DNA of 64,000 bases from Vitrella brassicaformis CCMP3155 (lineage: Eukaryota > Protista > Chromerida). The position numbers and the translations under genes are program-made. The DNA lies in contig CDMY01000400.1 in the NCBI GenBank assembly GCA_001179505.1, positions 1-64,000 of the forward strand. Direction: 5' to 3'. Position 1 is the first letter of the stretch. Each line of letters starts with the position of its first letter. Positions 30,391 to 53,793 of the stretch are shown here, one piece after another. The notes beneath the pieces were generated by a model. It did no database searches and was not told where the DNA came from. It worked only from the letters and a program-made list of their open reading frames with translations.

Positions 30391-30514
30391 ACAACACGCA
30401 ACAGGCATGCATTCATCTACAGACTTAATGAAAGAACAGTGACGACACATCGGAGGCAGACGAGTGCACAGACGGTGTGGGTCGGATCGAATCAGCTGAT
30501 TGGACCGAGACCTC

Positions 30515-32796: not shown

Positions 32797-35700
32797 ATGG
32801 CGAGGAGGCAGCTCGAGCGCACATACAGGTCTTTCGGGGTGGCATGATGAATGCATCCGCCCGCGTGATGTGATGAATCTGTGGATCTGTTTGTGTGCAG
32901 GGAGGGCATGGCGCCCGAACAGCATATCGATGCTATGCGGGTGCGGACACACAGGCGCACGCACGCAGGAATGACGCACTTTCTTTACGGCGTGTGTGTG
33001 TGTGTGTGCAGGTGAAGCGTAAGGTTGGAGAGCCCCTTGAGAAGCTCAAGGAATTCTCTGAAATCATCAAGATGCTCAACGAGGGGTCTACGGGACTCGC
33101 AGAACGCGTAAGCATGTGCGTGTGCGTGTGTGCGTGTCTTTGGTGGAGATCTACCTGTGTCCAATTGTGCAGATCTATTCCGAGAATGATCATTGTGTCG
33201 AGGAACTGATACAGAACGTCCGGTGAGCTTGAAACCCACACACACGTGTACGCGCATGCGCACGACCGTCGTGTGTGCGGGTGGTGTGACGTATGAGTGG
33301 GCAGCGATGCGCAGCTGAGTCTTTCCGACGGCGAGCTCGGGGACCTGGACATCAGGCTGCTCAAAAGCGACCCGTTCAACGCCATGAATGGTAGACAAAT
33401 ACACGGAGGACGGCCATCTCCCATTTGTGTGTGTGTGTGTGTGTGTGTATGCAGTGAAGTTGATCGCCTCTGAGCAGAAGTGCGCATTCCCCCCAGACAA
33501 GAGTCTGAAGCAGGACAACGGCTGCCTCATCCTCGTAAGTAGCCNNNNNNNNNNNNNNNNNNNNNNNNNNNNNNNNNNNNNNNNNNNNNNNNNNNNNNNN
33601 NNNNNNNNNNNNNNNNNNNNNNNNNNNNNNNNNNNNNNNNNNNNNNNNNNNNNNNNNNNNNNNNNNNNNNNNNNNNNNNNNNNNNNNNNNNNNNNNNNNN
33701 NNNNNNNNNNNNNNNNNNNNNNNNNNNNNNNNNNNNNNNNNNNNNNNNNNNNNNNNNNNNNNNNNNNNNNNNNNNNNNNNNNNNNNNNNNNNNNNNNNNN
33801 NNNNNNNNNNNNNNNNNNNNNNNNNNNNNNNNNNNNNNNNNNNNCATACATTCGTCATGGCTTCAACTCATGGATGGATGGATGGATGGATGGATGCAGT
33901 GCTACAACGAGCGTGGTTTCCGCTGGCAAGATGTCGAGTCCATCTGCTTCATCGGCGAGTCCACCAAAAGGGTACCTACGTACCTCCACGCACGACACAC
34001 ATGACGCGGGCCACGAATGTGTACACGATGGGTATATATGGGTGGTGTGTGGATTGTCCATCGATGTGTGTAGGAGGGGAGCGGCAAGTTCGTTGGCGAG
34101 AAGGGCCAGGGCTTCAAGGCCGTCTTCAACATCGCCAAGTGAGCTGACCGGCCATTCGATTCATGTGTGCGTGGATCCATCCATCCATCCATCCATCCAT
34201 CTGTGTGTGTCTGTGTCCGTGTGTCCGTTGTCAGCTTCGCGTACGTGCTGTCGGACCAGCCTTCGTCGCAGTACTTCTTTCGGCTGCGCGAGCACAAACA
34301 CCCCCTGTGTGGCGTCAAGTACGTATGGCACCACAAACACCATACTCGCCCATGTGTGTGTACACATCCAAGCTGTGTGGGTATGGGCGAAGGTATATCG
34401 TCCCTGATTACCTGCCGCGCGCATCGCTGCCCGAGGAGGTCACGACCATCATGAAGGGGAGGTATGTGCCGATAGCAATCAATGTGTCCATGCACTCACA
34501 AATGAATTTGTGTCGCGTGTGGTGTTGCACATGCATACATTCGTCATGGCTTCAACTCATGGATGGATGGATGGATGGATGGATGCAGTGCTACAACGAG
34601 CGTGGTTTCCGCTGGCAAGATGTCGAGTCCATCTGCTTCATCGGCGAGTCCACCAAAAGGGTACCTACGTACCTCCACGCACGACACACATGACGCGGGC
34701 CACGAATGTGTACACGATGGGTATATATGGGTGGTGTGTGGATTGTCCATCGATGTGTGTAGGAGGGGAGCGGCAAGTTCGTTGGCGAGAAGGGCCAGGG
34801 CTTCAAGGCCGTCTTCAACATCGCCAAGTGAGCTGACCGGCCATTCGATTCATGTGTGCGTGGATCCATCCATCCATCCATCCATCCATCTGTGTGTGTC
34901 TGTGTCCGTGTGTCCGTTGTCAGCTTCGCGTACGTGCTGTCGGACCAGCCTTCGTCGCAGTACTTCTTTCGGCTGCGCGAGCACAAACACCCCCTGTGTG
35001 GCGTCAAGTACGTATGGCACCACAAACACCATACTCGCCCATGTGTGTGTACACATCCAAGCTGTGTGGGTATGGGCGAAGGTATATCGTCCCTGATTAC
35101 CTGCCGCGCGCATCGCTGCCCGAGGAGGTCACGACCATCATGAAGGGGAGGTATGTGCCGATAGCAATCAATGTGTCCATGCACTCACAAATGAATTTGT
35201 GTCGCGTGTGGTGTTGGTGTGTGTGTGTGCGTGGGGGGGGNNNNNNNNNNNNNNNNNNNNNNNNNNNNNNNNNNNNNNNNNNNNNNNNNNNNNNNNNNNN
35301 NNNNNNNNNNNNNNNNNNNNNNNNNNNNNNNNNNNNNNNNNNNNNNNNNNNNNNNNNNNNNNNNNNNNNNNNNNNNNNNNNNNNNNNNNNNNNNNNNNNN
35401 NNNNNNNNNNNNNNNNNNNNNNNNNNNNNNNNNNNNNNNNNNNNNNNNNNNNNNNNNNNNNNNNNNNNNNNNNNNNNNNNNNNNNNNNNNNNNNNNNNNN
35501 NNNNNNNNNNNNNNNNNNNNNNNNNNNNNNNNNNNNNNNNGGGGGGGGGGGGGGGGCATACCTGCACACAGGACGTGTTTGTGTCTGTCGATGAAGAAGG
35601 ACGACCGCATCGACGCGTACGACATCATACACAAGAAGATCGCCGAGGTGAGTGAGTGTGCCGCGCTGCTCCTCCACTCATCCACAGACACGACCATCTG

Positions 35701-38700
35701 TCTGACCATCTTTGTGTATGGCGTGTGGTGTCTTGTGTTGTGATGTGCAGAAGTTGCAGCCCGAGTGTTTCCTCTTCCTCGACAAACCTGACAAGATAAA
35801 AATCACTGGTACCCATCCACACGCGCACACACGCACATAGAGAGAGGGTCAGGGAGAGGGAGAGATACCCACACACGCAGCCATGTAATTGCCCACCCAT
35901 GTGTGTGTGTGTGCAGCTGAGCACAAAACCAAGCGCCGTGTGGAGAAGGTCCTCATGCGCACCGTCACGCAGCACGGCGAGAACTACCAGGTCATCCAAC
36001 TATCCGTCGCAGAAGGTCCGGCCGTCCACACGAATGCACACATCGACGAACGACGGAAGCATCATGTGTTTGTCTCAATGATAACAGGGGGGTCGACGCA
36101 CTCGCGGCGGTACCTGTTGGTGGAACAGGAGAAACAAGTGCCACAGGAAATCAGAGACGTATGCACCCCACCCCACCCCACCCCACCCCCCACACACGAT
36201 CTACAGCAATCGACTGTGTACCCACACCCACGTCTCTGCATGCATGCAGGCGACCGAGACGCGCAAGTCGGCGGAGCGCCGCGCCGTGTGGGTGGCCTTC
36301 AACCTCGACGACAACGATAAACAAAACGGTCGGTTTGTCAACACATTTGCACACGTGTGTGTGCGTGTGGGGGTGCGTGGGTGCGCAGTTGCGGGCTTCC
36401 TGCCCATCGCCAGGCTGCCGTCCCTCTTCACCTACCTGCCCACGGGTATCCCAAACCCTCCCACCAACCCCCAGCAACCTTCCCACAGCACGTCGATACA
36501 CACGTGTGTGTCGATGCAATGCAGCTCAGGAGAGGACGGGCCTGCCTGCGTTGGTCAACGCCGACTGGCGGCTGGCGAGCAACAGGGAGACGCTAGAGTC
36601 GGGATCAGGCGCATGGAACGCGTACGTGGGGACCTATGCTGGGAGAGAGGGAGGGAGGGACGGAGGTGTGTGGGTGGGTGGGCAGGTGGCTGCGTGACGA
36701 GCTGGTCATTCCCACATACGTCGAGGTACGTCTGTGAGTACCTACCTGCGTCTGATGCACACATACGGACGCTCGTGTGTCTGCTCACATAGGCGTTGGG
36801 TGTGGTGTCATCTTTGGCGGCGTTCGCCCACCTGCTGCCGAGGTTCATCCCGCAGCAGGAGGGCTCCCAGCCCAGCAAACACTTTGCAAAAGTGGCCGAA
36901 AACATCATCACACAAGTCACAGACGGGTGGGTATACCGTTCTACGTCTGCAGACATGCCCTCATACGCATGGGTACAGATCGGCTGGATGTCTGTGTGTG
37001 TACGTATGTGTGTGCCAACAGGTCTGACGGCCCTCTCAAGTTGCTGTGGTGCGGCGATTGGGACCAAGACCAGTCCTTGCGCGTATCTGGTATGTCGTGC
37101 CAGCCAGCCAGCCACCCACCCACACAGAGAGGGAGGAAGACAGAGAGGGAGAGAGGGAAACAGAACAGACCAACAGCACGTAACACAACTACGCATCCAT
37201 GTCAGGCGACAAATCGTTCATTCCCGACGTCAAGAAGACCAAGAGGGCCACCGGCGAAGAGGACATCGTGACGGAGTTCAGACAGATGGAGAAGAAACTG
37301 CTACCCAGTAGCCAAATTCCACGCACCCACACACAGGCGAGTATGTGTCTGTGTGCTTGCATTCGTCAGACGATGGCGATTGCGTCTCTTTCGAGCGTGC
37401 GAACGGCATTGTGTGGGAGAAGTACGCTGACTCGTGCGACGACTGGTACACATGCATGTCTGCACCCATCCGGCCATCCATCCATCCATTCATGTGTGTG
37501 TGAGTGTGTGTGGGTGTGTGCAGGATTGACCGTCTGGGTGAGATCGGAGTTGAGGTGCCGGTCAGTGCTAAGAAGTTCGTCGAGTGGCTCCACACAGACA
37601 CCGCCAAGGAGGTAGGGAGATAGTCACACACACACACACACACACACAGAAATGGATCTCTCTCTCTCTCCCTCGCTCTCTCTGCGTTGTAGGGTTTTCT
37701 GCAAGCAGAAGAGGACGTGTGGGTGCAGATCTATGAGTTCTTCTCACTGCAGGTACCCACACGCCACACACATGCATTGAATGGGCCGACCTCATCACTC
37801 TGTCTGCTGTGTGTGTGCATCAATCGATCGACACCTGACAACACAGGCGTTCAAGAGCCGCAACGCCGACTTCAGGAACAACATCGTGCCCATCTTCCCT
37901 CTCAGAACAGTACAATACCATCGCGACACACCCACACACACGTAATTGTGCGCGTACACATATACAGCTTGACGGCGAGATCAAGACCAAGAGTCAGGGC
38001 GTGCTGTTCAAGGACGGCGTGGCACTCAAACCGCCCGTTGACGTAACCATACACCCACATACCACACACGCTCCACATGGCGTCACGTTGCTTTCTCTCT
38101 CTCTCGCTGTGTGTGTAGGGTGTCGGCTGCAGCGTGTTGGCGAAGGAGTGTCTGCCCACCAAGGAGAAATCTGAAGTGGTATGCACGTGTCTGTGTGTCT
38201 TGTCTGTAGGTAACCCCATGACTGTCTCGTGTGCTGCGTGCCTGTGCACACGTGTGTGGTTTCTGCAGGCGCACAGCTTCACGACCGAAGTGCTGGGCGT
38301 CACCGCATTGTACGCAATACGCGCACGCGCACAAGACATACAAGAGAGCACCAACACACATACACGCGCGTGTGTGGATGTGGTTCACTCAGTGACATCC
38401 GGATGTATCTCCTGGATCTGCGCAGCAAGATCGACCAGGCGCACACCGACCCACTCGCACCAGCACGACGCAAGAAGGCCACGTAACTACACACACACAA
38501 CACACACACAGAGAGAGAGAGAAAGAGAGAGTCCACACACGTGTGCATGGGTGGCCTCGCTGTGTGAAAACGCAGTGACGAGCAGAAGTTGGAGCTCACA
38601 CCCGAACAGCGCGCCAAGGTACGTGTAAGTTTCTGTGTGTGAGTGTGTGGATTCATGCTGTGAATGTGTGCGACGTGCGGAATGCGTGCAGCTGTTCTGG

Positions 38701-41517
38701 TGGCTGGACGATCTGCACAGCAAGATGATGATACAAAACAAACCGGCACTCGGCTCACTCACTGACATCGCGTACGCATCCCCAGCCACCCACTCACACC
38801 TCTCTCTCCCTCTCTCTCTCTCTCTCTGTGTGTCTGTGTGTGTGTGTGCAGGTCGGTCATCCCGGATACGTTGCGTGTCGACGGCAACGGCAACTTCGTC
38901 CCAAAAGCTGTGTGAGCATCCCAGTGCGCATCGCACACCTGTGAGAGTCATGTGTGGATGGATGCATTCATTGCGCAGAGTTGACGGCGAGTTGCGTCCC
39001 GAGGGCGTCATCTTCATGCCAAATCTAGAGGGTACTTTCACCCCCCCACCCACCCGACACACACACAGAGAGAAAGGGAAATGCGTGTGTGTGTGCGTGT
39101 GTGTATTCAGGCAAGTGGCCTCTCCTCTACGGCAAGGATGTCGACGAAACCATGAAGGCCATGGTACATTCACGCATCGCATCGCATTCACCCACACCCG
39201 CCGATGCACACTTTCGTCTGTTCTGTGCGTGTGTGATGATGGTGTGCACTGCAGGCTGCTGCAAGTGGTGGTGGCGGTGGTGGTGGCAAGAAGAAGGGCG
39301 GCGCCTCCTCGAGTGAGAAAGCCGCGTTGGCGTCCCCGATGCTCTGCCTTCACGACGCATTCATCGCCTGCAGGTGGGTGGGTGGGCTTTGTGGATCGGC
39401 TCAGCTCACCCGCATCCACACACACGTGTGCATTTGTGCGTGTGTGTGGGTTGGTGCAGGCCAGATGGCATGACCGTCCATGAGGCCAAGTACTCCGTCC
39501 ATCCATCCATCCATCCGCCCACCACGTCTGTTTGTTCCCCATCCATGCATGCATGCAGGCGTCGTCTGGCCAAGGCGTTTGAGAGCTGTGTGGTGGACCT
39601 GGTCCACTGGGGCACAGGGGCGGGGCAGGCCGCGGCCGTCAGCAAGACCATCGCCGACATCAGTGACCCAAACATGGCCATGGACAAACTTGCCGACCTG
39701 TGAGCGCGCGAATGAGCGCACCAGGAACACTCAATACACACGTGTGTGTGTGTGTGTGTGTGGATCGTTCTGTGCGTGTTGTTTTAGTGCACGTGTGCCG
39801 TTGGCTGAGAGGGCGACTACTGAGGAGGAGAAGATTCGCTACCTCAGAAGCACCGGGGTGTTCGCCGCATGTATGTCCGAAAACATACACACACCACAAC
39901 ACACAATATACAGACATGGGGGCAATTGGGGAGAGATGTGTGTGTGTGTGCGCGCAGGGGAGCATGTGACTGTGAAAACCTCGGTCATCCTGGAGAAGCC
40001 CCTGCTACTCGTACGCAGCCGCCACACCCACACACACCCAAGTGCACACACACGGAAATGCATGTGTGTATGTGTGTGGCTGATACAGACGCCCCGCGCA
40101 CCCCAGTTCCTCGTCGGCAAGTTCCTGGGCAAGGTAGACACCCCAGGGGAGAGAGAGGGCTTCTTGCTGTGTCTTGTGGTGCTGCATGTATGTGAGAGTG
40201 TGTGTGTGTGTGTGTGTACCCCACGCAGCTGGACCGCACCCCCGACAAAGAGAAGAATGACAAAACAAAAGCCACCCTACTGCTCAAGTAAAGCCTCCCC
40301 TCGTCCCCCCTCTCCCTCCCTCACTGCCTGTGTGTATGTGTGCATATTTGTGTGTGAATGAATGCAGTCATCTGTGTGCGTTCTACGGCCCTCTGTCATT
40401 GTCGCGTCTGTCTGTGGCCAACGAGTCCAAGAAGAAGACCGACGCCACCCGGGTGGAGGTCGGCGGACTCATGCTAGGGGAGATTGGGTAGGTATGCGAT
40501 GCGTCTGTTTGTGTGTTAACAGCTCTCTCTCTCTCTCTCTGTGGGCGCGTGTGTCTGTGTGTAGGTTCTTCGCCATCTTTGCGCACTGGCTGCCGGCCAT
40601 CATGCTCGACATCAAAGAGAGCCAACAACAGCAGCAGAAGGCCACGGCAACCGCCCAGCAGCAGCACAACAAGGGCAGGATGGAGGGCGGCAGAGGGGCA
40701 GGGCAGCAGCAGCAGCAGATGGGGGGCCGGCTGAAACGCCCACAACCACCAGCACCACCAGTGGCGGAGAAACCAGCTGCGGCAGCTGCTGCTACTGAAA
40801 AAATCGAAAAGGCCATCTGGTGAGCATTCACGCGCGTGTGCCCGCGTGTGTGTATTGATGCATATGTGTGTGATGTGTGTGTGTGTGTGCTTGTGCATTT
40901 GTGTGTGCGTGTGTGTGCGTGTGTGTGTGTGTGTGTGTGATCAGGGCGCCTCCCGCAGTGGTGTTCGACCGCTCGCTCATCCCTCCCCACCTCACAACCG
41001 ACACCCACGTCACACACATACCCCTCCTCGACGTTGCCGACAATGTAGGCGCGCGCACACACATAGGCGCAGACGGCCTCGTTGTATGCACGAGCGCATT
41101 TCTGTGTGTGGTCAGGAGCTGCAAGGTGACGGTTGTGGGTTCAGCGACGCTGTGGGTCTGACGGCCGGAATTCCCAACGTCACTGTGGAGCATCTCGTGC
41201 ACAAGTACGTGTCTGTGTGTCTTCATGAACTCATGGATGGATGGATGGACGGATGTATTTGGTTCTGTGTGTGGTCCGTCCGTGTGCAGGTTGATAGGTC
41301 TGTCACGGCTGTCGGCACTCCATCTCCCCGAGGATTTGCCGCACCAGATCGTAGCTGCCGTGGTAAGCACACACGCAGCTCCTCCTTCCTCACAAATGGA
41401 CAAACCCATCTGACGTGTGTGTGCAGGCCATGTTGACGTACCGGATGATAGCGCACAAAGCCAAGAAGGACACCGACGGCGTACGCAGAAGCGCACACAC
41501 AGACCTGGGATCTATGG

Positions 41518-41550
<33 letters not shown>

Positions 41551-44500
41551 TTGATATGACATGCAGCCGAGGCTGCGCGAGGCGTTTGAGAAGGACGAGC
41601 TGCTGATCGTCGGCAAAACGTGGAAACGGCGATCGGTGAGAAACCGTATCCCTCCCACCCACACGCGCAGAGACAGAGATGCGTGTGTGATGTATCTGTG
41701 GTTGGCAGCAAGTGATCTTTGACACGGGCGGTGAGCAGCAACAGCGTCGCGGCGGTCCGCAGCAGCACCAGTACGGGCGGTACATGGTCCTCAAGCCACA
41801 CGGCTACGAGGGGGACGACATCAGGTCGCTCATACAGATGCTCGACGTACGCGTCAACACACACACAGGCAGAGAGAGACCATGTGTATGTGTGCGGGAG
41901 TGGCTGTTTGTGTGCATCCTCTCTGTCTCTGTGCACAGATCCCTCTGGAGCCGCCCCTGTCGGTCCACTGTGACTACTACATCGACCTCCAGAACAGGCT
42001 GCTGCAGCGGGGCGCTGGCGCCGCTGGGGGTGCGGTGCCTTCTGCAGGCCACCAGGCCATGCAGGGCACCTTGCATGCCATGAAGGCGTCACTCAGGCAC
42101 ATTGCCGACGAGTTGACCAGATCTGGTACGACAGTCGGACCACCACATGAACAGGGCCGTCCATCTGTCTGTCTGTCTGTCTGCGTGTGGGCATGTGTGT
42201 TTGTGTCAGGCAATCGTGCTGAGTTGCCTGAGTCGTTTATGAGGGAAGCCATGGTGGTCACCGATAGTGGCAAGGTACACATACATAGACACACGCACGG
42301 AGGCAGGACCATTTTACCTGTGCGTGTGTGGGCGGGGGTTTGATGGCTGCAGTTGGCGGCGTGCAGCAGTGCGGTGGTGGTTGACAGCGACTTCTGGCGA
42401 CGGCCTGTGGACGTAACCATACACCACACACATGCCCTTATCTGCATGGTGTGTATGTGTCTTTGTGTGGGTTTGCTGCAGCCGTTGAGCGACCAGCTCT
42501 CGTTGGCCTTCACCGGCTACATGATGCAGGGGCAGCTCAGCGACGGCTTCATGCACCTGTACAAGTAAGCAGCCATACACGACTTGACGCACTCGTGTGC
42601 ACATGATACCTCCAATGCACTTGTGGTTGGTGTGTGTGCAGGAGTTTGGGCGTGCGTCAGCTGTCGCACTATCTGACGTGCTTCCCTGACGGACGGGGCG
42701 AAGAAACGGTACTGCACCACACACACACACACACACACAGAGGCTGTTGTGGTTGTGTGCAGACGGTCCCAGTGCCCCAGCTGCTGAGCGATGCGGTCAA
42801 GAGGGCGTTTGTGCAACTCCTGTGCGAAGACAAGAGCGAACAGGCCGTCATGTAAACACACAATGCACACACACACACATACACAGAGAGAGAGAGAGAG
42901 AGACCCCTGTGGACGCGTGTGTGTGTGTGTGTGTGAAGGTCGTGTTTGTCGTCTCCCCGGACCAACACGGACATGCCCCTGGGAGCATTCCTCTGTGCCA
43001 AGGAGGTCGGTCATCTCACACATATACACAGGCACATACATACGCACATTCATGCGTACCTCTGTGTGCGTTCGTTACAGGCCTATTGCAGCGGCGTGCG
43101 TGCCTCCTGGCGCATCATGGACTGGCAGACAGACACTGCTGACCGAGACACAGACAAGGTCAGTCAGTCGCGCCACCTGTCTTTCCTCACCCACACCCAC
43201 AGCCACACCCACACCCACGTGTGTGGTGCGTGCAGGCCCCGCTGCCCATGTTGTCGACCGACGATCTGCCCGTCCAGGGCGCATTCCGACTTAGAACACG
43301 GCCTTTTCGGTATTGCGGCACGGAGGGGCACACGGACGGCATGAGTGAGTGTGGTGTGTGCAGGCTGCTGTTGTGTGAGGAGTACCTCGCCAGAAGCGGC
43401 AAGAGGTGCGCTGTGCTGTGTGTGTTGGTGTGTGCGTGTATGTCGGCATTAATCTCCCTCTCTCTCTCTCTCTCTCCGTGTGTGCATGGCAGCCCGTCGA
43501 CAGACATGCGTGGCGACATGCAGCTGTTCGATCACCTGGTGCACCAGCTCGCCGCTGAGTTCAGACTCTCGAAGGACGCCAAAGTGAGCACAGGCAGCAC
43601 CAACACACACACACACGCGTGGATGGCCTCATCTGTCTGTGGTGTCTGTATGGTCGTCAGAGCAAGCTGAGGAGCCTGCTGAGCGAGCCCAAGCTGGTCA
43701 CACTCGACGAAGTCTCAACTGCAGTCGACAGCAAAATCAGTACGATACCCACACCCACACCCACCACCTGTCTGTGTATGGGTATGCAGATCAGGTGTTG
43801 CGCGACCCTGAGAAGTGGGTTGAGGACAGCATGGGCCCGGAGGAGCAGCCCGACCACTACCAGCAAGAGCAGCAGCACCTGGGGCTCTTCGGAAGGGACA
43901 TCATCAGACAGGTATACACACACGCCGAATCTCTCTCTCTCTCTCTCTGTGTCTACCTCTCTCACCCTCTCTCTCTCTCCCTGTGTGTGTGTGTGTGTGT
44001 GTGAGTAGGGTTTTGACGAGTCGGCTCGTGCGGACGACATGCTGACCACAGACGCCCTTCACACCAATGAGGGCAGGTGCGCATACCCACGCACACGCAC
44101 ACATACGTGTGGGTGCGCGTGTGTCTGCATGTCTGTCTGCGCGTGTGCTCACCCAGGCACAGAGGGGTCTTCTACAACTCGGGCCGTAGACTTGGGCAGT
44201 CGGCCAGCCTGGGACGGGTACACACACACACACACAGAGGCAATGATGGCAAAAAAAAAACACGAACATCCAGACCTGAGTGTGTGTGCTCAGACCCGCA
44301 TCTTGTCGGGCAATTTGCCTGAGATCTCTGGGGTGCGGCCGTTGTCGCGGACTCAGCTCATGACCAGGGAGAGGGAGAAGCTCAACAAAAAGGGCCCCAA
44401 GGGGCAGGTACACAGGCAGCGACACGTGCGCACACATGGGTCCACTCTGTACGGTGTGGCAGGTGCTGATGAAGCGCCCGAAGTTCTCGGAGAAGGTCAA

Positions 44501-45472
44501 GCGCCAGAGCCCACTTGAGGTATGCATCCGCCCCGCCCCCCCCAACACACACAGCAACATCATCTGTGTGTGTGTGTGTGTGTGTTGTCACCTGTGTGCT
44601 TAGTTCGAAGTGTCGTGGACGGACTGCCCCGGGGCCGACAAGTACATGCTGCAGGTGAGTGAGCGTGACGCACGCACAACACACAGATGGATGGATGGAT
44701 GGACGGATGTCGTCGTGCGCCTCATTCGCACATACATGGGTAGATCTTTGACCGGTCGTCTGCACTAGACCCCACGAAGACACCTGGTGGGGTGGGTGGG
44801 TAACCACACACACAGCACTGTGTGTGTTTGTACACACACACTCTCTCTCTCTCTCTCTCTGTGCGTGTGTGTGGGCTCTGTGTGCAGAGGAGAGGGCCGA
44901 GTACGCCGAGAACCCCATTGACGCCTTCGTGCTCGACAAGGTACACATCCCCACCCCCACAGCACACACATGCACATGCACATGCACACACCGACCGACT
45001 CACCGATGGATCAGGACACGCGCAAGAAGCTCATCACCAAGGGCGAGACCCGCAAGTGCGTGCGTACACACACCACGCACACACACAGACACACACACAG
45101 ACACACAGACGTAGATGGAGTGTGCACGCAGGTTGGAGCACCTGCACCTCTACGAGCTGTTCGTCACCGCACTCTACAAGAAATCCGACGACGAGACAGA
45201 CAAAGACAAGGAGCAGCAGCAGCAGCAGCAGGACGACACGCACGAAGACGGTAGGCACACACCCGTCCATCCATCCATCCATCCAATCACACAGGGGGAG
45301 AGATAGATAGATGTGTGTGTGCGTGCATATGTCAGACAAGTACATTAAGGTCAAGTGCGACAGGGCTGTGAGCTACTCGACCAACCTCTCCACACCAAAG
45401 TGGAAAATGCAGGCCGTCAAACGGCTCATCGACGGAATCGACGTAAACCAGACGTTCTATTCCCCACCTCTC

Positions 45473-45505
<33 letters not shown>

Positions 45506-45857
45506 GTGTTTGGATGGGTGTGTGCGTCGACAGGCGGACGAGTGGGTGGCGTCTCGTCGGGAGGGCATGCAGCCCTTCACGGCCACCATCAAGCTGGCAT
45601 GGGACCGAGTCGAGGGCGCCGAGGGGTTACTGACAACACACACACACACACACAGAGAGAGACAGAGGCGCAAGTGTGCCTGTGTGTGTGTCTGTATGCG
45701 TGTAGTTATGACGTGTACGTCATCCTGTCGTCCCCGTCGTTCCCATTCGGCCGGTCTCCGAAGCGTTTCGAGCTCAAACACGACAAGACCTCCATCACAC
45801 TCGACGAACTCAGGTACACACAGGCGGCTGCTTTCGCTTCCTTTGCTTCGGCGCGGA

Positions 45858-45893
<36 letters not shown>

Positions 45894-48800
45894 TGTGTGT
45901 GTAGGCATGAGGAGGCGCGTCTGGCGTGTCATGTGAAGGTGCGCGAGTACGTGTGTGCGGATGGATGCGATGCATCCATCTGTGTGAAATTTGTGTGTAT
46001 GTGGTGTGTGCAGATCCGTGCGTTCCACAAGAAGCAGGAGTCTTCTGTGTCTTCCATCACGTCATCCGACTGGTGCCTCTCTAGAGTGCACCCACCCACA
46101 CCGATCCATCCCTCTCTGTTTGTGTGTCCCACCCAACCGTCCGTCCGTCGATTCATCAGGTCTGCGCTGATCACTCTGCTGCCCTTTGGCGGCGTCCACA
46201 TGACCACAGTCGACACACTCGAGGAGAGCGACACGCCGCACGACGACGCTGCTGCCGAGGAAATCGAAAAGGTATGTGTACGTTCGTGGACACCTCCATG
46301 AGTGTGTGTGTGGCGGGTGTCCACAGGTGTGGAAGGACGTCAAGAGAACGAGCAAGAAGGTACTTACTGTGGGTGTGCATGTGTGGGTGCGGGTGTGGGT
46401 GTGGGTGCTGATGTGCATGTGTGTATCTGTGTGCAGGGTGGCAGGAAGCGCCGCAACAACAATGACATGGACGAAGACGACGAAAGCACACAATGGGTAT
46501 GTTTTTCTTTGTATGTCATGTGTACACACGCGAGAGGGATACACCTGTGGCCATCGTGCGTCCGTCTGTGCACATGTATGTCCACATCCACCCACAGGCC
46601 AAGGGCGAGCTGCCGATAGAGTTGGCGAAAGGTATACAAATCAATGCAACCAATGCACTTGGCACATCGGCGCTACTGATGTTTGTTTCGTATACGTGCG
46701 TGCAGACTGCGAGTACATCCATCTGGCCGAGAAACGTATCCCCACACCCTCCACCCACACACACGCGCACACGCATCCATGTCTCTGTCTGTGCGTGCAG
46801 CCGACGAGCCGATGGAGCACTCAGCCACAGTGGAGCCGGCACGTGCCCCTACACACACACACACACCGCACCACACACCACACACCCGCACACGTGCATT
46901 TGTGTGCAGGGTTGTCTATCTCCCGGCGTCCACGTGGCCTTCCACCCACACGCATACGAAGACACCGGCGGCATGCTTGCACGTGTCAAACAAGTCTGTA
47001 GGCCACTGTGCACATACACAGAGAGAAAGAAAGAAAGATATACATGGTCGTCTTCGTCTGTGTGTGTGTGTGTGTGTGTATGTGTGCAGGTGGCCGATGA
47101 CGCTACCGCCTTGACGATAGACCGCCTGTACATTTTCCCACGGATGTGCGCCTTCATGCGCACCCACATAGCTGGCAACACACGCGAGGTGACCCATCAC
47201 CCAATCACCCACACAAACAAACGCACAGATGGATGGATGGATGGATGGACGGACGGATGTGTATGCGCGTGTGTGTCTAGGTGTTGTGTCGGAGCATTGC
47301 CGACCGCTCGGTGCTCATTTCCCATGTGTCGCGTGTCGTCAACGTGCAAGAAACCGACCCATGGGGCATCCCTGACACACAAGACGTACGCACGCACACA
47401 CGCTCTTGAACCGATCAACGTGTGTGTGGATGGGTGCACCAGGCGATGGACACCGATGAGGCTGCGGCCGACGAGTACTTCTGCCGATACAAGATTGACC
47501 GCCTCGCCACTCAAACCATGCACAACGGTACCTTACACCAAGACCCATACACGCACACACACACACACACACAAAATGTTCCGTTGCTCATGTGGGCATC
47601 TGTGGACGCGTGTGCAGGTCTGGTGACGTACAGCGTGTCGGTGTCGCCGCTAATCGAGTCGCCGAAGCGGCCGCTGTTCGACTACAACCTCTTCGCACAG
47701 CAGATGGACAAACGGTCGGTAACACCATGCACATGGCCCGGCCATACACCCACACAGAGTGTGTGTGTTGTCTGTGTGGATGTGCATGCGTCAGGTGTCG
47801 CTGGACGGTGGGCGATCTCTTCGCCGGTGGCGGCGCTGCCGCACTGGGCCTCTGGCAGGCCGGCATCCGCACCTCATGGGCCATCGAAAAGGTACGCAAC
47901 CACCCACAAACCCCTCTCTCTCTCCACACACAAAGGAGGGTGTGTGCAGGATTCGGTGGCTCATGCGTTGTTCAAAGCCAACATGAACGAGCGATACGCA
48001 CACACAGGAGGAGATGCGGACCTCTCGCCGGCCCCGCCTGCGTGTGATGTGCACGATCTCGACGTGTACGAGGTGCTCAGGGGCATTATCCATGGCAAAG
48101 GTAACACTTGAATGCACACGCGAAGAGAGAGGGAGGGGTGTGTGTATGCCCTATGTGTGTGTGTGGTGTGTGGATGGATGTGAGCAGCTGGGTGCCCCCT
48201 GCCGTATGCGACTCGCGTGTTGGTGGCCACGAGCACATCGCTCAACATGGGCAACGACGGTACACACACACACACACACACACAACGGACATGGACAGAG
48301 AGAGAGAGACATTGATGCAAGTGAATGTGTGTATGTGTGTGGGTGTGTCTGTGTGCAGCATCGCGTCTGCGCGCGCGTCAGAGTGACGTGGTGCATGCCA
48401 CCCTCGCCGCGGCCAAGATCCTCCAGCCGGAATATGTGGTGCTTGGTACGTTTGTCTGCTGTATACGTGACACATCCATCCATCCATCCATGCATCCATG
48501 CATCCATGCGTCTCTTCCCGTGTGAGTGCAGAGTCCCCCCTGTGTGTGCTGTCGTCTTCCGCCGACACGGCCACACTCATGGCCTTCTACAGCCTCGCCA
48601 GCGGCTTCCTGGACGCAGGATACGCATATAATATCCAGGTGCCCACACCGTGTTTGCACACGTCGGTTTGTCCATCCATGGGTGTGCATTTGTGTGTGCA
48701 TTCAGGCTGTCCGTGCGTGTGACTATGGGGTGCCCAACACCCGCACCCACCTCATGTGTGTCGCCAGACGAGCCGACGTGACTATGACATCAACGCAAGA

Positions 48801-51427
48801 GCTGTTTCCGAAGCCGATTGACGCACGTACGCACACACACACACACGGCAAGGACGTATCAACACACAGATGTGATGGGTGTTGTGTTGGTCTGTGTGCG
48901 GGTGGGTGGGATGGCCAGGTGTGTGTGTGCGTGAGGCCATCGGGGATCTGCCGTCGATCAGCGGGCCGCTGGCGTGTCACGAAAACGGGGGCTACAGGAC
49001 CTACGCGCGGAAAGGCAAGCGCTCTCGAGACGCCAATTCATGGACTGATGAGTCTGTTTGTACGGGTGTGTGTGTGTGTGAACAGGCACGCTGTGTGTCT
49101 ACCAGAAGGACATGCGCGACATCGTCAACAACCGACCACTCAGGAACCATGTAGGCGTGCATGGATTGTGTCCGCACCCACCCACACCCCCACACACACA
49201 CGCATGGGACAGACGCACCTCGTTGACGTGTCATGCAGGTGTTCGTGTCATCGGATGAGCACCATCACCCGTCGCAATCGTCGCAATCGTCGCCGTCGGC
49301 GTGCGAGTGGCAGCAGATCTACACCCACACAAACGTCATCACGATGCACCCCGACCCAAAGCAGAAGAGGCCTCTCACCGTGTAAGCACCCATCCATCCA
49401 CCCATCACACAGAGAGAGAGAGAGAGAGAGAGGTGGTCCCCCCCGCATGTGTGTTGTGTTGTGTGTGTGGCAGCCGTGAGTACGGTCGTCTTTGGTCGTT
49501 CCCCGACTCGTTCTTCTTCTCTGCCGGCATCACACAGCACCAGATCAACATCAGTATGCGCACTCACAAAGTGTGGTGTGCGCCGGTTATATACTCTGTG
49601 TGTGTGTGTGTGTGTGTTCAGTTGTGGCATCCACGCCTCCCCTGGTGCTCAAGCACATCGCCATGGCTCTCACTGACGGCGACGTGTATGTGCCCCCCCC
49701 CCCCCCCCCCNNNNNNNNNNNNNNNNNNNNNNNNNNNNNNNNNNNNNNNNNNNNNNNNNNNNNNNNNNNNNNNNNNNNNNNNNNNNNNNNNNNNNNNNNN
49801 NNNNNNNNNNNNNNNNNNNNNNNNNNNNNNNNNNNNNNNNNNNNNNNNNNNNNNNNNNNNNNNNNNNNNNNNNNNNNNNNNNNNNNNNNNNNNNNNNNNN
49901 NNNNNNNNNNNNNNNNNNNNNNNNNNNNNNNNNNNNNNNNNNNNNNNNNNNNNNNNNNNNNNNNNNNNNNNNNNNNNNNNNNNNNNNNNNNNNNNNNNNN
50001 NNNNNNNNNNCCCCCCCCCCCCCCCCACACACACACACACAATGATGCAGAGATGTGTGTGCATGGGTATGGGGCGTCTATCTACGTCGGTGTGTGTGTG
50101 TGCAGGCCTCCCGCGGTAGACGATGCCCACCCCGCCCCACCCGCACCAGCTGCGGCTGTCTGTGTTTGTGTAGCTGACGGCAAGGACGACAAGAAGAGGG
50201 GCGGTGGCAGGAAGAGACCATTGGAGGAAGGTATGTGTCCGCACATCCACAATCCGAATCATTGTATGCCCCTGTTTGTGTGTGTGTGTGTGTGTGTCCG
50301 CCTGTCTGGGCGCACTCAGCCGATGAGAAGAAGGACCATAGGGAGGGGGGTGGCGGCGGCAGTGGCGGTAGCAAGAAGGCAGCGTCGGATAAGAATGAAG
50401 GTCGGTACCCCATACACCGTACACACGCCAAACGGTTCACTCAATGCATATAGGACGGCAATATGGGTGCGTGCAGATGACGTTGATGTTGATGTTGTTG
50501 ATGACGACGAGCCCAAGCGGCCAATCAGGGCCAGGAAGAACAACAAGCGCAAGCTGCCCGACAGCGACATAGAGGAGGAGGACGGTACGCACACACGCAT
50601 CAGAGAGAGAAGAGACACATGTGTTTTCATTCCTGCAGATGAGCACGAGAAGAAGGAGGCGGAGAAGGACAGCGAGAAGAAGAAGGACAAGGACAAGGAG
50701 ACACCCGTGGCCGCCGCTGCTGCAGCAGCTGCTGCTGCACCCGTCCCTGCTGCTGCTGGTGCTGCTTCTGCTGCTGCATCGGGGTGAGTACCACATTGGT
50801 GTCCAAATGCAGCACCATCTGTGTGCACGTCATGGATGGATGGATGAGTGCAGGTCAGCTGCCGATGGCGATGACGGCGTCCATGATGAGGACGGGTTGA
50901 GGATGTACGTGGACATCGTCCCGGACGGCCAACGCCACGGCGGCCATCAAGACCAAGCAAAGGAGGAAGAGGCAGCTGACAGCACACAGGACAAGAAGGA
51001 CAACAAGGGCAAAGACACACAGAAGGTACCCACCCACCCCCACAGAGACACGTGCCCCATCCGTACTTGTTCGTGCCTTTTTGTGTGCCGCATTCACACA
51101 TAGGCCGACAGCAAGAAGGTCTCTCCCAAGCCGAAAGCCAAGTCGGCCCCGAAGGCCAAGCCGCAGGCTGAGGCCAAGAAGAAGACCTCGGGCACCAAAC
51201 CGGACGCCAAGCGGCAGAAAAAGGAGAAGGAGGAGAGAGAGGGAGACCACAAACGGGGTGAGTGCTGCGCCCCACATGAGATGCGTGTATTGACGGCGGA
51301 CACATGTTTGCCTTTGCGTGTGGTGTGTGTTGGGCGGGTGGATGCGCTGTGCATGTGTTGTGTTGTGTTGTGTGTGTGATCAGGCCAGGTGCAGAGCAGC
51401 ATCACGCAGTTCTTCGGCAAGAAGTAG
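32797..51427 (+). CDS. Giant multidomain protein: Sacsin/NO-VEIN-type GHKL ATPase, long middle region, 2x FN3, BAH, degenerate C5 DNA-methyltransferase fold, charged tail, PIP box
   Basis: About 100 short exons joined in phase by a manual walk (GT-AG plus two GC-AG introns; gaps at 33545, 35241 and 49711 unresolved). GHKL: EELIQNVRDA, YNERGF..ICFIGESTK, VGEKGQGFKAVF, LQPECFLFL, GLPALVNADWRLASNRE..WN. FN3: FEVSWTDCPGADKYMLQ..YELFVTAL and TIKLAWDRVEGAEGYDVYV..VKIRAF..SDWS. MTase: DLFAGGG, PEYVVLESP, DYGVPNTR, VREAIGDLP, LTVREYGRLWSFPDSF. Ends QSSITQFFGKK*. Confidence 0.8.
33845..35217 (+). repeat. Apparently identical 689-bp tandem duplication of four GHKL exons (probably an assembly artefact)
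   Basis: The unit starting at 33845 recurs at 34534 (offset 689). Both outer ends abut N gaps. Splicing both copies would join phase 2 to phase 0 and shift the frame. Confidence 0.85.
51392..51415 (+). other. Canonical PCNA-interacting (PIP) box QSSITQFF at the C-terminus of the giant protein
   Basis: Last exon (51384-51427) encodes GQVQSSITQFFGKK*, which matches Q-x-x-[ILM]-x-x-F-F. Confidence 0.8.
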
Positions 51428-52014: not shown

Positions 52015-52851
52015 TCAGACCACAGTCCTGAAGGCAGCCAGCAGCTTCTTGCCCTCATCCCTGCCCACACTACTGCTACTCCAACGGGCCAGCAGTATAC
52101 TGCTGGTCAGCTGCGACTCGGTGATGAACACCGTGTTCGCCACCAGGGGGATAAGACAGAGAAGCCCGAGCCAAGTCGCTAAGTCCCAGACCAGTGGAAG
52201 AGTCCACACCAAATAGTGAGCCCAAGCGATGACAGATACAGCACAGATCAAGTGGGTCAACACGGCGCGGCGTTTGGCGTCGTCCAAGAGAGGTGAGACC
52301 ACCCCAAAGGCAGCAGAAAGCCGTGTGAGGAACGCCACAGAGGCTGGGAAGAAGAAGGCCCAGGTCAGGCAGGCCCAGGCCCAGACGGACCGAGGGATGA
52401 GGCCAGCGAGGAAGAGGAAAGGGACCAGGAACCACACGTGATGCAGCAACAGCGACACGTAGAAATCGATCCTACAGAACTGCATAAACGAAAGCAAAGA
52501 CACAGAGAGGAAGGAGTCCGATTGGCACCCACCACCCCGGCTGTGCTTTCTTCACCCGATCTCACCCTCTCGATCTTGGGTTGCGCCTCGCGTGCTAGCG
52601 TGGCTCGTGTGGCCCTGCGCAGTGGTCCTGCCGCAACCTCGCGAGGTCCTCGTTCCGCCGTAGGCTGAGAAGCCGGACGCCATGGTGGAAGCACCAGGTA
52701 AGGCATCGAACGGCCAAGAGGAAACGGAAACAGGAGAGATCTCGCCCAGCTCGAGGTCCAATCCCACGGGCTTCACGGTCGCATCCTCAGAGAGATCACC
52801 AGGTAGATCTTCTATGGGAATCGAAGGATTGCCAAGCACGCGAACAGCCAT
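52015..52851 (-). CDS. Multi-pass membrane protein of unknown function (paralog of 1417-2274)
   Basis: Likely three exons: MAVRVLGNPS...TVKP|PTAERG...QPKIER|FCRIDFYVSLLLHHVWFLVPFLFLAGLIPRSVWAW...AAFRTVV*. Hydrophobic final exon; upstream exon boundaries are less certain. Confidence 0.65.
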
Positions 52852-52993
52852 GATCGTCCAGACCTCCTTGCCCGGAAAGGGAAGGAGAGGAAGGAGAAAG
52901 GTGCTGAGCTCGTCAGCAGCCTTAGGACTTTCCGTGAAACCGTGCTCAGGCGCTAAGCTCGCAGTGAAATTGGAAGCTTGAGCCGAGACACCA

Positions 52994-53793
52994 ATGGTAA
53001 GAACACACCCCCCACTCCAGAGCAGCAGGCAGCCAGCTGCAGGAAGAAACACGAAAACAGGCGGCACAGATCAGATCTGACAAACGAGGCAGTTGCAGGC
53101 AGGAGGAGTCCCGCCGAGGCAGTCTGCCAGTGTCGCTTCCCTCACACGCTTCACGACACACCACGCACACACACACCACTCACGCACGGGTGTTTGATGG
53201 TCACCTGCCCTCCCCCTCTCACTCCATCCGCTGTGCTCTCTCTGTGCGTGTGTGGTTCAGGTTGGCAAGACCAAGGCGCACGAGTTGCGCAACTCGAGCG
53301 AGAAGGAGCTTTTGAAGAAGCTCGAGGAGTACCAGAATGAGCTCGCCTCTCTCAGGGTCGCCAAGGTCACTGGAGGTGCCGCTTCGAAACTCGCCAAGAT
53401 CAAGGTACACAACACACGCACACCCAGTCAGTACGGAAGGAAGGAGGCGTGTATGCGTCTATGCGTGTGTGTGTGGTGCAGATCGTGCGCAAGTCGATTG
53501 CGCGGATCCTGACGGTGTACAATCAGAAGCGGAAGGAGGAGGCGCGCAAGGAGTGGGACAAGAAGAAGTACAAGCCCATCGACATCAGGCAGAAGAAGAC
53601 GCGCGCCAAGAGACGGAAAATCCCTGCCGGATTCGCTAAACCAACCGTCAAGTGAGTGGTCGACACAACACAGCCATGGTTGTGCCCGCCTCATGTGCTC
53701 TTGGTGTGTTGCATTTCGTGTGCGTGTGTGTCCTGCAGGGAGACCAAGAAGCAGATGAACATCAAGACTCGCCGCTATGCTGTCAAGGCATGA
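52994..53793 (+). CDS. RPL35: 60S ribosomal protein L35 (uL29)
   Basis: ATG-only first exon, then [48 protein letters not shown]|[15 protein letters not shown]...[16 protein letters not shown]...|[17 protein letters not shown]. Confidence 0.97.

What the first reader, a model, noticed from the sequence alone, without database searches (positions are those of the whole stretch)
32797..51427. One giant gene fusing a Sacsin/NOV-type GHKL ATPase to 2xFN3, BAH, a DNMT1-like fold and a PIP box
Seen: walking the exons from ATG 32797 to TAG 51427 gives one phase-consistent frame of about 100 exons outside the three N gaps, with no internal stop or intergenic break between the ATPase (33.2-36.7 kb), FN3 pair (44.5-46.2 kb), BAH (46.9-47.5 kb) and MTase fold (47.8-49.7 kb). 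Established: GHKL ATPases (MORC, Sacsin, NO VEIN) are nucleic-acid or chromatin clamps and co-occur with restriction-modification systems in prokaryotes; BAH plus C5-MTase plus PIP is the DNMT1 layout. Inference: a replication-coupled, ATP-driven chromatin or DNA-modification reader/remodeller. I know of no described protein with this architecture; ATPase-DNMT fusions such as DNMT5 use SNF2, not GHKL.
Basis: partly seen in the sequence, partly recalled or inferred. Interest (0 to 1): 0.9.

Follow-up and report, generated by a model that had tools for sequence, protein, structure and literature searches.

The report
GHKL ATPase fused to dead DNMT
This is one real, expressed gene of about 103 exons in the alga Vitrella brassicaformis; it joins a Tiamat/NO VEIN/sacsin-type ATPase to a DNA cytosine-methyltransferase domain that has lost its catalytic residues and ends in a PCNA-binding motif, a combination already in the public annotation but not discussed in any paper I could find.

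Summary
The exon walk holds. My own splice model gives one open frame from ATG 32797 to TAG 51427: 103 exons and 2867 aa if the duplicated island is counted once. All three N gaps fall inside introns, and the phases match across each.

Spliced RNA contigs reproduce the exon borders. One 9118-nt contig has the length expected of the whole mRNA.

The window is Vitrella brassicaformis CDMY01000400.1:1-64000. The public annotation already holds a single 2949-aa model ending at 51427. Its only Pfam hits on record are SACS and DNA_methylase.

My piecewise profile searches hit only Tiamat TmtA / sacsin ATP-binding models and C5-methyltransferase models, in collinear order.

The two FN3 domains and the BAH domain got no profile support. 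They rest on pattern reading only.

The methyltransferase keeps motifs I, VIII and IX but reads TSL for PCQ and ESP for ENV. A Vitrella paralog, CEM15752, keeps both motifs, so this copy is probably a pseudo-enzyme.

QSSITQFF, three residues before the stop, is the protein's only PIP-box match.

The layout is not DNMT1. This scan had already met the paralog on other DNA. I rate it a new variant of a known kind; its function is untested.

The parts
32797..51427 (+). Whole coding region: 103 exons, 2867 aa in the single-copy model (2971 aa if both copies of the duplicated island are kept; the public model has 2949 aa)
   Evidence: My splice model has no stop. RNA contigs agree. The public model ends at 51427.
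33173..33390 (+). Exons carrying the Bergerat N-box; the spliced peptide reads EELIQNVRDA
   Evidence: Spliced translation. The public product hits Pfam SACS PF25794.
33545..33844 (.). Assembly gap 1, inside an intron (donor 33535, acceptor 33899; phase 0 on both sides)
   Evidence: the exons on either side join in frame into a continuous sacsin-type motif.
33845..35240 (.). Island between gaps 1 and 2. It is a perfect 683-nt tandem duplicate (33845-34527 = 34534-35216) and probably an assembly artefact
   Evidence: The length of the RNA contig fits the single-copy model.
33900..34138 (+). ATP-binding exons: the NE..F exon and the G-box exon (GEKGQGFKAVF)
   Evidence: PADLOC TmtA PDLC03966 profile positions 88-110 and 114-130 (E 5e-4). 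NCBIfam NF047352, sacsin ATP-binding, positions 58-74, E 0.0098.
35241..35540 (.). Assembly gap 2, inside an intron (donor 35151, acceptor 35571; phase 2 on both sides)
35572..36926 (+). Continuation of the ATPase domain. Exon 36525-36621 matches TmtA profile positions 331-360
   Evidence: It is collinear with the hits.
37022..44519 (+). Middle region of about 1300 aa with no family hit. It sits where Tiamat/NOV proteins carry DUF3684, which is my inference only
   Evidence: No hits. The splicing is fully validated by RNA between 39254 and 43912.
44604..46072 (+). Two FN3-like modules (about 44604-45250 and 45534-46072), proposed from pattern reading only
   Evidence: Spliced sequence shows W...GA..Y.V ... 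Y.L.V.A patterns. The two modules align weakly: score 35, reached by 22 of 500 shuffles. There is no fn3 profile hit.
46910..47527 (+). BAH-like region of four exons, proposed from pattern reading only
   Evidence: Refined exons. No BAH hit in Pfam, the PDB, the Atlas or the public record.
47795..49685 (+). C5 DNA methyltransferase-like domain. Motif I is at 47795-47891, degenerate motif IV at 48188-48259, motif VI at 48359-48638, motif VIII at 48706-48826, motif IX at 49474-49553 and motif X at 49622-49685
   Evidence: Pfam PF00145 profile 2-32 and 137-182. PADLOC MTase_II PDLC03234 profile 7-41, 151-190 and 286-338. The motif VIII exon hits only M.HhaI residues 153-187 in the PDB. The public product hits PF00145.
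49711..50010 (.). Assembly gap 3, inside an intron (donor 49686, acceptor 50105; phase 2 on both sides)
50106..51257 (+). Low-complexity tail rich in Lys, Glu and Asp, with basic NLS-like clusters
   Evidence: Exon coding scores of 20-64. Translation.
51392..51415 (+). PIP box QSSITQFF, followed by GKK and the stop codon TAG at 51425-51427
   Evidence: It is the only match to Qxx[ILM]xx[FY][FY] in the protein. None of 2000 shuffles places a match in the last 15 residues. The consensus and the DNMT1 PIP QTTITSHF come from PMC7225939.

Best explanation
**What is shown.** The locus is one nuclear gene of Vitrella brassicaformis, encoding a protein of about 2870-2950 aa.
- The N-terminus is a Tiamat/NO VEIN/sacsin-type GHKL (Bergerat-fold) ATPase with intact N-box and G-box.
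- A long middle region without family hits follows.
- Where Tiamat and NO VEIN carry a PD-(D/E)xK nuclease, this protein has a different module: two FN3-like and one BAH-like stretch (both unproven), then a C5 DNA methyltransferase fold.
- The methyltransferase fold keeps the AdoMet-binding motif I and the DNA-facing motifs VIII and IX.
- It has lost the catalytic Cys (PCQ reads TSL) and ENV (reads ESP).
- A basic and acidic disordered tail ends in a canonical PIP box.

**What is inferred.** The protein does not methylate DNA.
- It more likely works as an ATP-gated dimeric clamp or reader on DNA or chromatin.
- PCNA would bring it to replication forks.
- It plausibly acts with, or regulates, its catalytically intact paralog CEM15752, as DNMT3L does for DNMT3A.

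**My confidence by part.** Gene structure and the two fold assignments about 0.9. Catalytic death about 0.8. A functional PIP about 0.5. The partner-of-paralog mechanism about 0.25.
For: **One gene.**
- A single stop-free path of 103 exons; the phases match across all three gaps.
- Spliced RNA contigs from two studies reproduce the exon borders.
- The 9118-nt contig has 2487 nt 5' of position 39254, against 2409 nt of CDS in my model.
- It has 2534 nt in the middle, the same as the model's 2538 nt after correcting for the differences seen.
- It has 4097 nt 3' of position 43912, against 3657 nt in the model.
- That is a full-length mRNA with about 78 nt of 5'UTR and 440 nt of 3'UTR.
- The public model is one product of 2949 aa with SACS and DNA_methylase hits.

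**Family assignment.**
- PADLOC hits across 75 scanned pieces are only TmtA and cytosine methyltransferases, and they are collinear.
- Supporting hits: NF047352, PF00145 and M.HhaI.

**Loss of catalysis.**
- The spliced sequence reads VLVATSTSLNMGN and LQPEYVVLESP.
- The paralog reads FLTASSPCQGFSTIN and LQPEHVMFENV at the same places.

**PIP box.** Unique in the protein and C-terminal. It resembles the DNMT1 PIP.

**Context.** Tiamat-like proteins swap their nuclease for other effectors, and their genes sit beside DNA methyltransferase genes.
Against: - No biochemical data exist.
- BAH and FN3 have no statistical support.
- The 5' and 3' parts of the RNA contig were not seen directly; only its length and the middle 6 kb were.
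- The gaps hide sequence, and the duplicated island leaves the exact N-terminal sequence uncertain.
- PIP-like motifs are short. PCNA binding and nuclear localisation are untested.
- Whether Vitrella has 5mC at all was not established here.
- A search of 1.8 billion representative proteins with a BAH-MTase piece returned nothing, not even the public model, and I cannot explain that.
Confidence: 0.6

Rival explanations
1. The methyltransferase domain is still active. It would use a non-canonical nucleophile or act on another substrate such as RNA or another base, so the protein would be an ATP-coupled writer like DNMT5.
For: Motif I (FAGGG), the acidic residue of motif II, and motifs VIII and IX are kept. 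The domain lies in a long intact ORF that is expressed.
Against: Both catalytic motifs are changed at once: PCQ reads TSL and ENV reads ESP. The paralog keeps both. No Cys lies in the motif IV loop. From my own knowledge, Cys-to-Ser mutants of bacterial C5 methyltransferases are inactive.
Confidence: 0.1
2. It is a decaying duplicate: an expressed paralog of CEM15752 on its way to becoming a pseudogene, with no function of its own.
For: The catalytic motifs are lost. The BAH-like and FN3-like parts are too divergent for profiles. No relatives turned up in one large search.
Against: An 8.6-kb frame across 103 exons with no stop or frameshift would be hard to keep without selection. The RNA contigs are correctly spliced and deep. 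The ATPase motifs are intact. The PIP box is canonical and terminal.
Confidence: 0.12
3. It keeps the ancestral immune role of Tiamat-type ATPases. The methyltransferase-like domain would sense foreign or unmethylated DNA from viruses or transposons, rather than serve replication-coupled chromatin maintenance.
For: Tiamat is an antiphage ATPase-DNase whose relatives swap effector domains and whose genes sit beside DNA methyltransferase genes. Vitrella carries several NOV/sacsin-type genes according to earlier notes (unchecked).
Against: There is no nuclease or other killing effector on the protein. A PIP box and NLS-like tail point to the replication fork instead. Nothing here tests infection.
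Confidence: 0.15
4. It is really two genes, or a mis-scaffolded chimera, joined only by gene prediction across gaps.
For: Three N gaps and a duplicated island lie inside the locus.
Against: The gap-free block 35541-49710 already holds both a TmtA-matching exon (36525-36621) and the whole methyltransferase domain in one frame. A spliced RNA contig covers 39254-43912 without a break and extends 2.5 kb and 4.1 kb beyond. The phases match across every gap.
Confidence: 0.03

Closest known systems
Tiamat (TmtA) / NO VEIN / SACSIN family of GHKL (Hsp90-like) ATPases
   Same: The N-terminal Bergerat fold carries the family's own motifs (ELIQN..DA, NE..F, G.KGQGF, LP.LVNA.W). Matches to TmtA, NF047352 and Pfam SACS support this. 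A long region follows the ATPase, as in the family.
   Different: No PD-(D/E)xK (DUF3883) nuclease and no DUF3684 hit were found. The C-terminal effector is a C5-methyltransferase fold, which is not among the eukaryotic Tiamat-like types I-XI listed in the 2026 preprint.
Vitrella paralog CEM15752
   Same: The methyltransferase domain sits at nearly the same residue position (2269-2619 there, about 2233-2590 here). Strings around motifs IV and VI are shared (PLP..TR.L.A.S, LQPE.V). An earlier agent reports the same ATPase-methyltransferase build for a 2826-aa public model, which I take to be this paralog.
   Different: The paralog keeps SPCQGFS and ENV. This gene has TSL and ESP, and it has a longer tail ending in a PIP box. 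I could not fetch the paralog, so its N-terminus and tail were not checked here.
DNMT5 (SNF2 ATPase fused to a C5 methyltransferase)
   Same: An ATPase and a C5-methyltransferase fold on one polypeptide.
   Different: The DNMT5 ATPase is SNF2-type and lies C-terminal to an active methyltransferase. Here the ATPase is GHKL-type and N-terminal, and the methyltransferase is degenerate. No SNF2 hit was found.
DNMT1
   Same: A C5-methyltransferase fold preceded by a BAH-like stretch. The PIP box is very like that of DNMT1 (QSSITQFF against QTTITSHF).
   Different: No RFTS or CXXC hit. At most one unproven BAH. The PIP is at the C-terminus. The catalytic Cys is absent. A published tree groups the paralog's domain with diatom DNMT4-type enzymes.
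DNMT3L (catalytically dead DNMT paralog that regulates an active one)
   Same: A methyltransferase fold with lost catalytic motifs that coexists with an intact paralog.
   Different: DNMT3L is small and has no ATPase. Any partnership here is inference only.
MORC ATPases
   Same: GHKL ATPases that dimerise on DNA or chromatin and are functionally tied to DNA methylation and silencing (my own knowledge; for the prokaryotic context).
   Different: They belong to a different GHKL clade. No MORC-type hit appeared, and MORCs are not fused to methyltransferases.

Membership tests
Tiamat/NOV/sacsin-type GHKL ATPase (Pfam SACS PF25794, NCBIfam NF047352, PADLOC TmtA) | Bergerat N-box E..QN..DA | tested here: met
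   The spliced exons read EELIQNVRDA.
Tiamat/NOV/sacsin-type GHKL ATPase (Pfam SACS PF25794, NCBIfam NF047352, PADLOC TmtA) | G-box / ATP-lid motif G..G.GF.S and the preceding N(N/E)..F element | tested here: met
   NF047352 positions 58-74, E 0.0098. TmtA PDLC03966 positions 88-110 and 114-130, E 5e-4.
Tiamat/NOV/sacsin-type GHKL ATPase (Pfam SACS PF25794, NCBIfam NF047352, PADLOC TmtA) | Whole-domain profile match | tested here: met
   The public 2949-aa product carries an unmarked (E at most 1e-5) PF25794 SACS hit. Three collinear TmtA stretches appear.
Tiamat proper (ATPase + DUF3684 + PD-(D/E)xK nuclease) | C-terminal PD-(D/E)xK (DUF3883) nuclease | tested here: not met
   No such hit in 75 pieces and none on record for the public product. 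The protein is therefore 'Tiamat-like', not Tiamat.
Tiamat proper (ATPase + DUF3684 + PD-(D/E)xK nuclease) | DUF3684 middle domain | tested here: inconclusive
   No hit. Short exon pieces have little power, however, and the region is about 1300 aa long, as in the family.
C5 DNA methyltransferase (PF00145) | Motif I F.G.G (AdoMet binding) | tested here: met
   DLFAGGGA. PF00145 positions 2-32. DruM E 3.4e-4 and MTase_II E 1.7e-3.
C5 DNA methyltransferase (PF00145) | Motif IV P-C-Q with the catalytic cysteine | tested here: not met
   The exon 48188-48259 reads VLVATSTSLNMGN. The paralog reads FLTASSPCQGFSTIN.
C5 DNA methyltransferase (PF00145) | Motif VI E-N-V | tested here: not met
   This gene reads LQPEYVVLESP where the paralog reads LQPEHVMFENV. 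Glu is kept; Asn-Val is lost.
C5 DNA methyltransferase (PF00145) | Motifs VIII, IX and X and a whole-domain profile match (the fold) | tested here: met
   PF00145 positions 137-182. PDLC03234 positions 151-190 and 286-338. M.HhaI residues 153-187. The public product hits PF00145.
DNMT1 | RFTS (replication foci) domain and CXXC zinc finger | tested here: not met
   No hit in the pieces and none on record for the public product.
DNMT1 | Tandem BAH domains before the catalytic domain | tested here: inconclusive
   One BAH-like stretch by pattern only. No PF01426 hit, no PDB hit and no Atlas support.
DNMT1 | Catalytic domain in the DNMT1 clade | not tested
   I built no tree. In the published tree the paralog CEM15752 groups with diatom DNMT4-type enzymes.
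DNMT5 | SNF2-family ATPase fused to the methyltransferase | tested here: not met
   No SNF2 or helicase hit. The ATPase is GHKL-type.
PIP-box proteins (PCNA partners) | Q-x-x-[ILM]-x-x-[FY]-[FY] in a disordered, accessible segment | tested here: met
   QSSITQFF at residues 2857-2864 of 2867. It is the only match, and 0 of 2000 shuffles place one in the last 15 residues. Consensus from PMC7225939.
PIP-box proteins (PCNA partners) | Physical binding to PCNA | not testable with these tools
   This needs a pull-down or ITC with the C-terminal peptide and Vitrella PCNA.
Fibronectin type III domain | Profile match or a beta-sandwich fold | tested here: inconclusive
   No PF00041 hit. The two modules align weakly with each other, about p 0.04 by shuffling. 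A structure prediction was not possible without a reference for the spliced sequence.

The most novel reading that the evidence does not exclude
Chromerids may run a maintenance system not described in any eukaryote. Two paralogous proteins derived from Tiamat-type immune ATPases would heterodimerise through their GHKL heads into an ATP-gated clamp. One partner (CEM15752) would supply cytosine methylation. The other (this gene) would be a dead methyltransferase that reads the DNA and tethers the pair to PCNA at replication forks. This would link the otherwise enigmatic NO VEIN/sacsin ATPase family directly to DNA methylation.
Probability: 0.15. Interest if true: 0.85.

Novelty: new variant of a known kind. 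Interest (0 to 1): 0.6.

Why it matters
ATPase-coupled DNA methyltransferases are known only with SNF2 motors (DNMT5). GHKL ATPases such as MORCs are linked to DNA methylation only through separate proteins.

This gene and its paralog put a Tiamat/NO VEIN/sacsin-type GHKL ATPase and a C5-methyltransferase fold on one chain. In bacteria the same two functions sit in neighbouring genes around Tiamat.

That gives a concrete, testable hint about what the poorly understood NOV/sacsin ATPases do on nucleic acids. It also offers a natural active/dead paralog pair, one carrying a PCNA tag, for dissecting how such a machine might be targeted.

It also corrects DNMT surveys of alveolates. They list only the paralog and do not mention its ATPase.

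Tried and rejected
1. Pfam and PDB searches with single exons (20-50 aa) gave nothing or chance hits. Exons here are too short, so I switched to stop-free pieces and to smaller libraries.
2. The search of protein representatives with the piece 47410-48108 returned no protein at all, not even the public model. A HMMER bias-filter loss on a junk-rich query is my guess; it remains unexplained.
3. A profile built from 120 enterobacterial Dcm proteins found nothing in the spliced protein. The family is too narrow, so the result says nothing.
4. Two scans of JGI contigs for cDNA of this gene, using exons 47950-48099 and 50855-51025, found nothing. Vitrella transcriptomes are in that collection, but no cDNA of this gene turned up.
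5. An ESM Atlas search with a BAH piece gave only noise.
6. PDB searches with BAH exons gave no BAH hit.
7. I looked for a single-exon neighbour to reach the public annotation and found none. The AOX neighbour worked instead.
8. A candidate gene boundary at 40.8-41.4 kb (weak coding scores, with a stop just after exon 40565-40819) was rejected. The RNA contig splices 40820 to 40947 and runs on.
9. GT-only splicing mis-modelled the BAH and motif VIII exons by inserting micro-exons. Allowing a GC donor at 46839, or the GT donor at 46830, and keeping exon 48706-48826 whole fixed this.
10. Left out: Pfam, HHpred or AlphaFold on the spliced protein or on the BAH/FN3 region.

Full report
**Source and setting.** The window is intron-dense eukaryotic DNA with about 57% G+C. 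It holds seven runs of exactly 300 N, three of them inside the finding.

A neighbouring alternative-oxidase gene retrieved the protein P0125, named Vitrella brassicaformis CCMP3155. Looking up where that protein is encoded showed that the window equals CDMY01000400.1 (assembly GCA_001179505.1) positions 1-64000 in plus orientation, at 100% identity. Earlier agents' notes had named the same organism.

**Gene structure.** No gene finder was on offer, so I wrote an exon-chaining dynamic programme. It scores codon use against intron trinucleotides, uses donor and acceptor matrices, and forbids in-frame stops, including stops split across a junction. I trained it on the locus itself.

- It converged on short exons and short GT(A)...(TG)nCAG introns.
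- In the gap-free block 35541-49710 it gave one stop-free chain of 88 exons. Every exon but one 4-nt micro-exon (later corrected) had a positive coding score, and no intron exceeded 259 nt.
- The reverse complement of the same block scored 252 against 1378.
- The final single-copy model has 103 exons, a CDS of 8604 nt and 2867 aa, running from ATG 32797 to TAG 51425-51427. Median exon length is 79 nt and median intron length 80 nt.

**The gaps, tested first.** Each gap sits between a good donor and a good acceptor, and the phases agree.

| Gap | Donor | Acceptor | Phase |
|---|---|---|---|
| 1 | 33535 | 33899 | 0 |
| 2 | 35151 | 35571 | 2 |
| 3 | 49686 | 50105 | 2 |

- Across gap 1 the joined peptide reads as one uninterrupted sacsin-type motif.
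- With the 300 Ns removed, the three introns would be 65, 121 and 120 nt, which are normal for this gene.
- The 1396-nt island between gaps 1 and 2 is a perfect 683-nt tandem duplicate. Homopolymer runs (poly-G at gap 2, poly-C at gap 3) sit at the gap edges. I read the duplicate as a scaffolding artefact that repeats four ATPase exons.
- Keeping both copies also stays in frame and gives 2971 aa.

**RNA evidence.** I laid two runs with spliced contigs on 38200-44199.

- All nine listed GT..AG joints coincide with my exon borders.
- The exon sums between anchor pieces match exactly: 35, 240 and 796 nt.
- The one weak spot that could have been a gene boundary (40.8-41.4 kb) is spliced through.
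- One contig of run X7 is 9118 nt long. It has 2487 nt 5' of 39254, 2534 nt between 39254 and 43912, and 4097 nt 3' of 43912.
- My single-copy model predicts 2409, 2534 (2538 in the model as it stands, 2534 after correcting for the exon differences seen) and 3657 nt for the same three parts.
- The contig is therefore the right size for the whole mRNA, with about 78 nt of 5'UTR and 440 nt of 3'UTR. A second study's contig ends within 10 nt of the same 3' point.
- The share of sampled 31-mers held by RNA run X1 over 46000-49700 was 0.31. A fully covered cDNA would give at most 0.34 under my exon model.
- I saw only the middle 6 kb of the contigs directly. The rest is arithmetic.

**Public annotation.** The record lists one gene that ends at window position 51427. 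Its product has 2949 residues, and its only precomputed Pfam hits are PF25794 (SACS) and PF00145 (DNA_methylase), both at the strong level. So the single-gene reading and the two main folds are independently on record. BAH, fn3, RFTS, CXXC, DUF3684 and DUF3883 are not.

- Against PADLOC, every one of the 15 families hit was either the Tiamat ATPase TmtA or a cytosine methyltransferase.
- The TmtA stretches are collinear with the genome: profile positions 88-110 (exon 33900-33971), 114-130 (exon 34074-34138, E 5e-4) and 331-360 (exon 36525-36621).
- NCBIfam's best hit overall was the sacsin ATP-binding model.
- One methyltransferase model matched at positions 7-41, 151-190 and 286-338. These are the motif I, VIII and IX exons.
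- Pfam DNA_methylase matched the first two of those exons.
- The motif VIII exon hit nothing in the PDB except M.HhaI residues 153-187.
- BAH and FN3 drew nothing in Pfam, the PDB or the Atlas.
- The spliced sequences do show FN3-like and BAH-like patterns, and the two FN3-like modules align weakly with each other at about p 0.04. That is a lead, not a test.

**Catalytic state.** Motif I (DLFAGGGA) and the AIE of motif II are present. Motif IV reads VLVATSTSLNMGN and motif VI reads LQPEYVVLESP.

The supplement of Funabiki et al. (PMC10538959) lists one Vitrella DNMT, CEM15752, with its domain at residues 2269-2619. It reads FLTASSPCQGFSTIN and LQPEHVMFENV at the same places.

The shared flanking strings and the near-identical position of the domain (about 2233-2590 here) mark the two as paralogs. 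This copy has lost both catalytic motifs.

An earlier agent of this scan described a gene with the same build on another scaffold as a public 2826-aa ATPase-methyltransferase model; I take this to be CEM15752. I could not fetch it to check.

**PIP box.** QSSITQFF is the only match to the canonical pattern in the protein. It lies at residues 2857-2864 of 2867, and no shuffle out of 2000 placed a match in the last 15 residues. It closely resembles the DNMT1 PIP, QTTITSHF (PMC7225939). The public model uses the same stop codon, and hence the same final frame.

**What it most likely does.**

- Shown: a GHKL ATPase with intact ATP-binding motifs, a methyltransferase fold without its catalytic residues, a charged tail with a terminal PIP box, all on one expressed mRNA.
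- From the literature: Tiamat is an ATPase-DNase predicted to dimerise as a clamp. Its relatives swap the nuclease for other effectors, and its genes sit beside DNA methyltransferase genes (preprint 10.64898/2026.09.30.754977). None of that paper's eukaryotic types carries a methyltransferase.
- Inferred: the protein is an ATP-gated DNA or chromatin clamp or reader brought to forks by PCNA, possibly pairing with the active paralog as DNMT3L pairs with DNMT3A.

Rivals are a still-active enzyme, a decaying duplicate and a retained immune sensor. Two genes is essentially excluded.

**Comparison and novelty.**

- It is a member of the sacsin/NOV/Tiamat ATPase clade, but it is not Tiamat proper because it has no nuclease.
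- It has the C5-methyltransferase fold but fails the catalytic-motif tests.
- It is not DNMT1: no RFTS or CXXC, the PIP is C-terminal, and the paralog groups with DNMT4-type enzymes.
- It is not DNMT5, because it has no SNF2 domain.
- Surveys of DNMTs and of Tiamat homologs do not mention the combination.
- The model is public, and the scan had already met the paralog.

I therefore file it as a new variant of a known kind, with moderate to high interest resting on untested function.

Noticed in passing
window 33845-35240: A perfect 683-nt tandem duplicate (33845-34527 = 34534-35216) is boxed in by two 300-N gaps, and homopolymer runs sit at the gap edges (poly-G at gap 2, poly-C at gap 3). It is probably a scaffolding artefact and likely inflates the public protein by about 100 residues.
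   Followed up: partly
window 30373-31008 (- strand): A 211-aa ORF begins with a signal peptide and ends in a Cys-rich tail. It has no identical protein in the collection, so it seems unannotated. Its nearest relatives are two Vitrella proteins at 53-59% identity, one labelled Dickkopf_N and one WAP. One of them lies at 76.0-76.7 kb on the same scaffold.
   Followed up: partly
window 56129-57958 (- strand): An alternative oxidase gene: public product of 366 aa (P0125, PF01786), with identical transcripts in two JGI transcriptome samples (L005, L006).
   Followed up: yes
window 46839: The best-scoring path uses a GC-AG intron here. A GT donor 9 nt upstream (46830) gives an in-frame alternative. 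RNA over this spot was not examined.
   Followed up: no
window 47410-48108: A phmmer search of 1.8 billion representative proteins with this piece, which holds three true exons in frame, returned zero hits, although a public 2949-aa model of the gene exists. A bias-filter loss on a query full of translated TG-repeat intron is possible.
   Followed up: no
window 41045-41712: The RNA contig holds 284 nt of exon here, where my model has 295 nt, and the next exon starts at about 41708 rather than 41713. The net difference of 6 nt is in frame, so one or two exon borders in my model are slightly off.
   Followed up: partly
window 52015-53794 (L004 14166-15944): The public annotation lists a 201-aa gene without Pfam hits and a ribosomal protein L29 gene just downstream. 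That leaves about 590 nt between the stop codon at 51427 and the next gene, enough for the inferred 440-nt 3'UTR.
   Followed up: no
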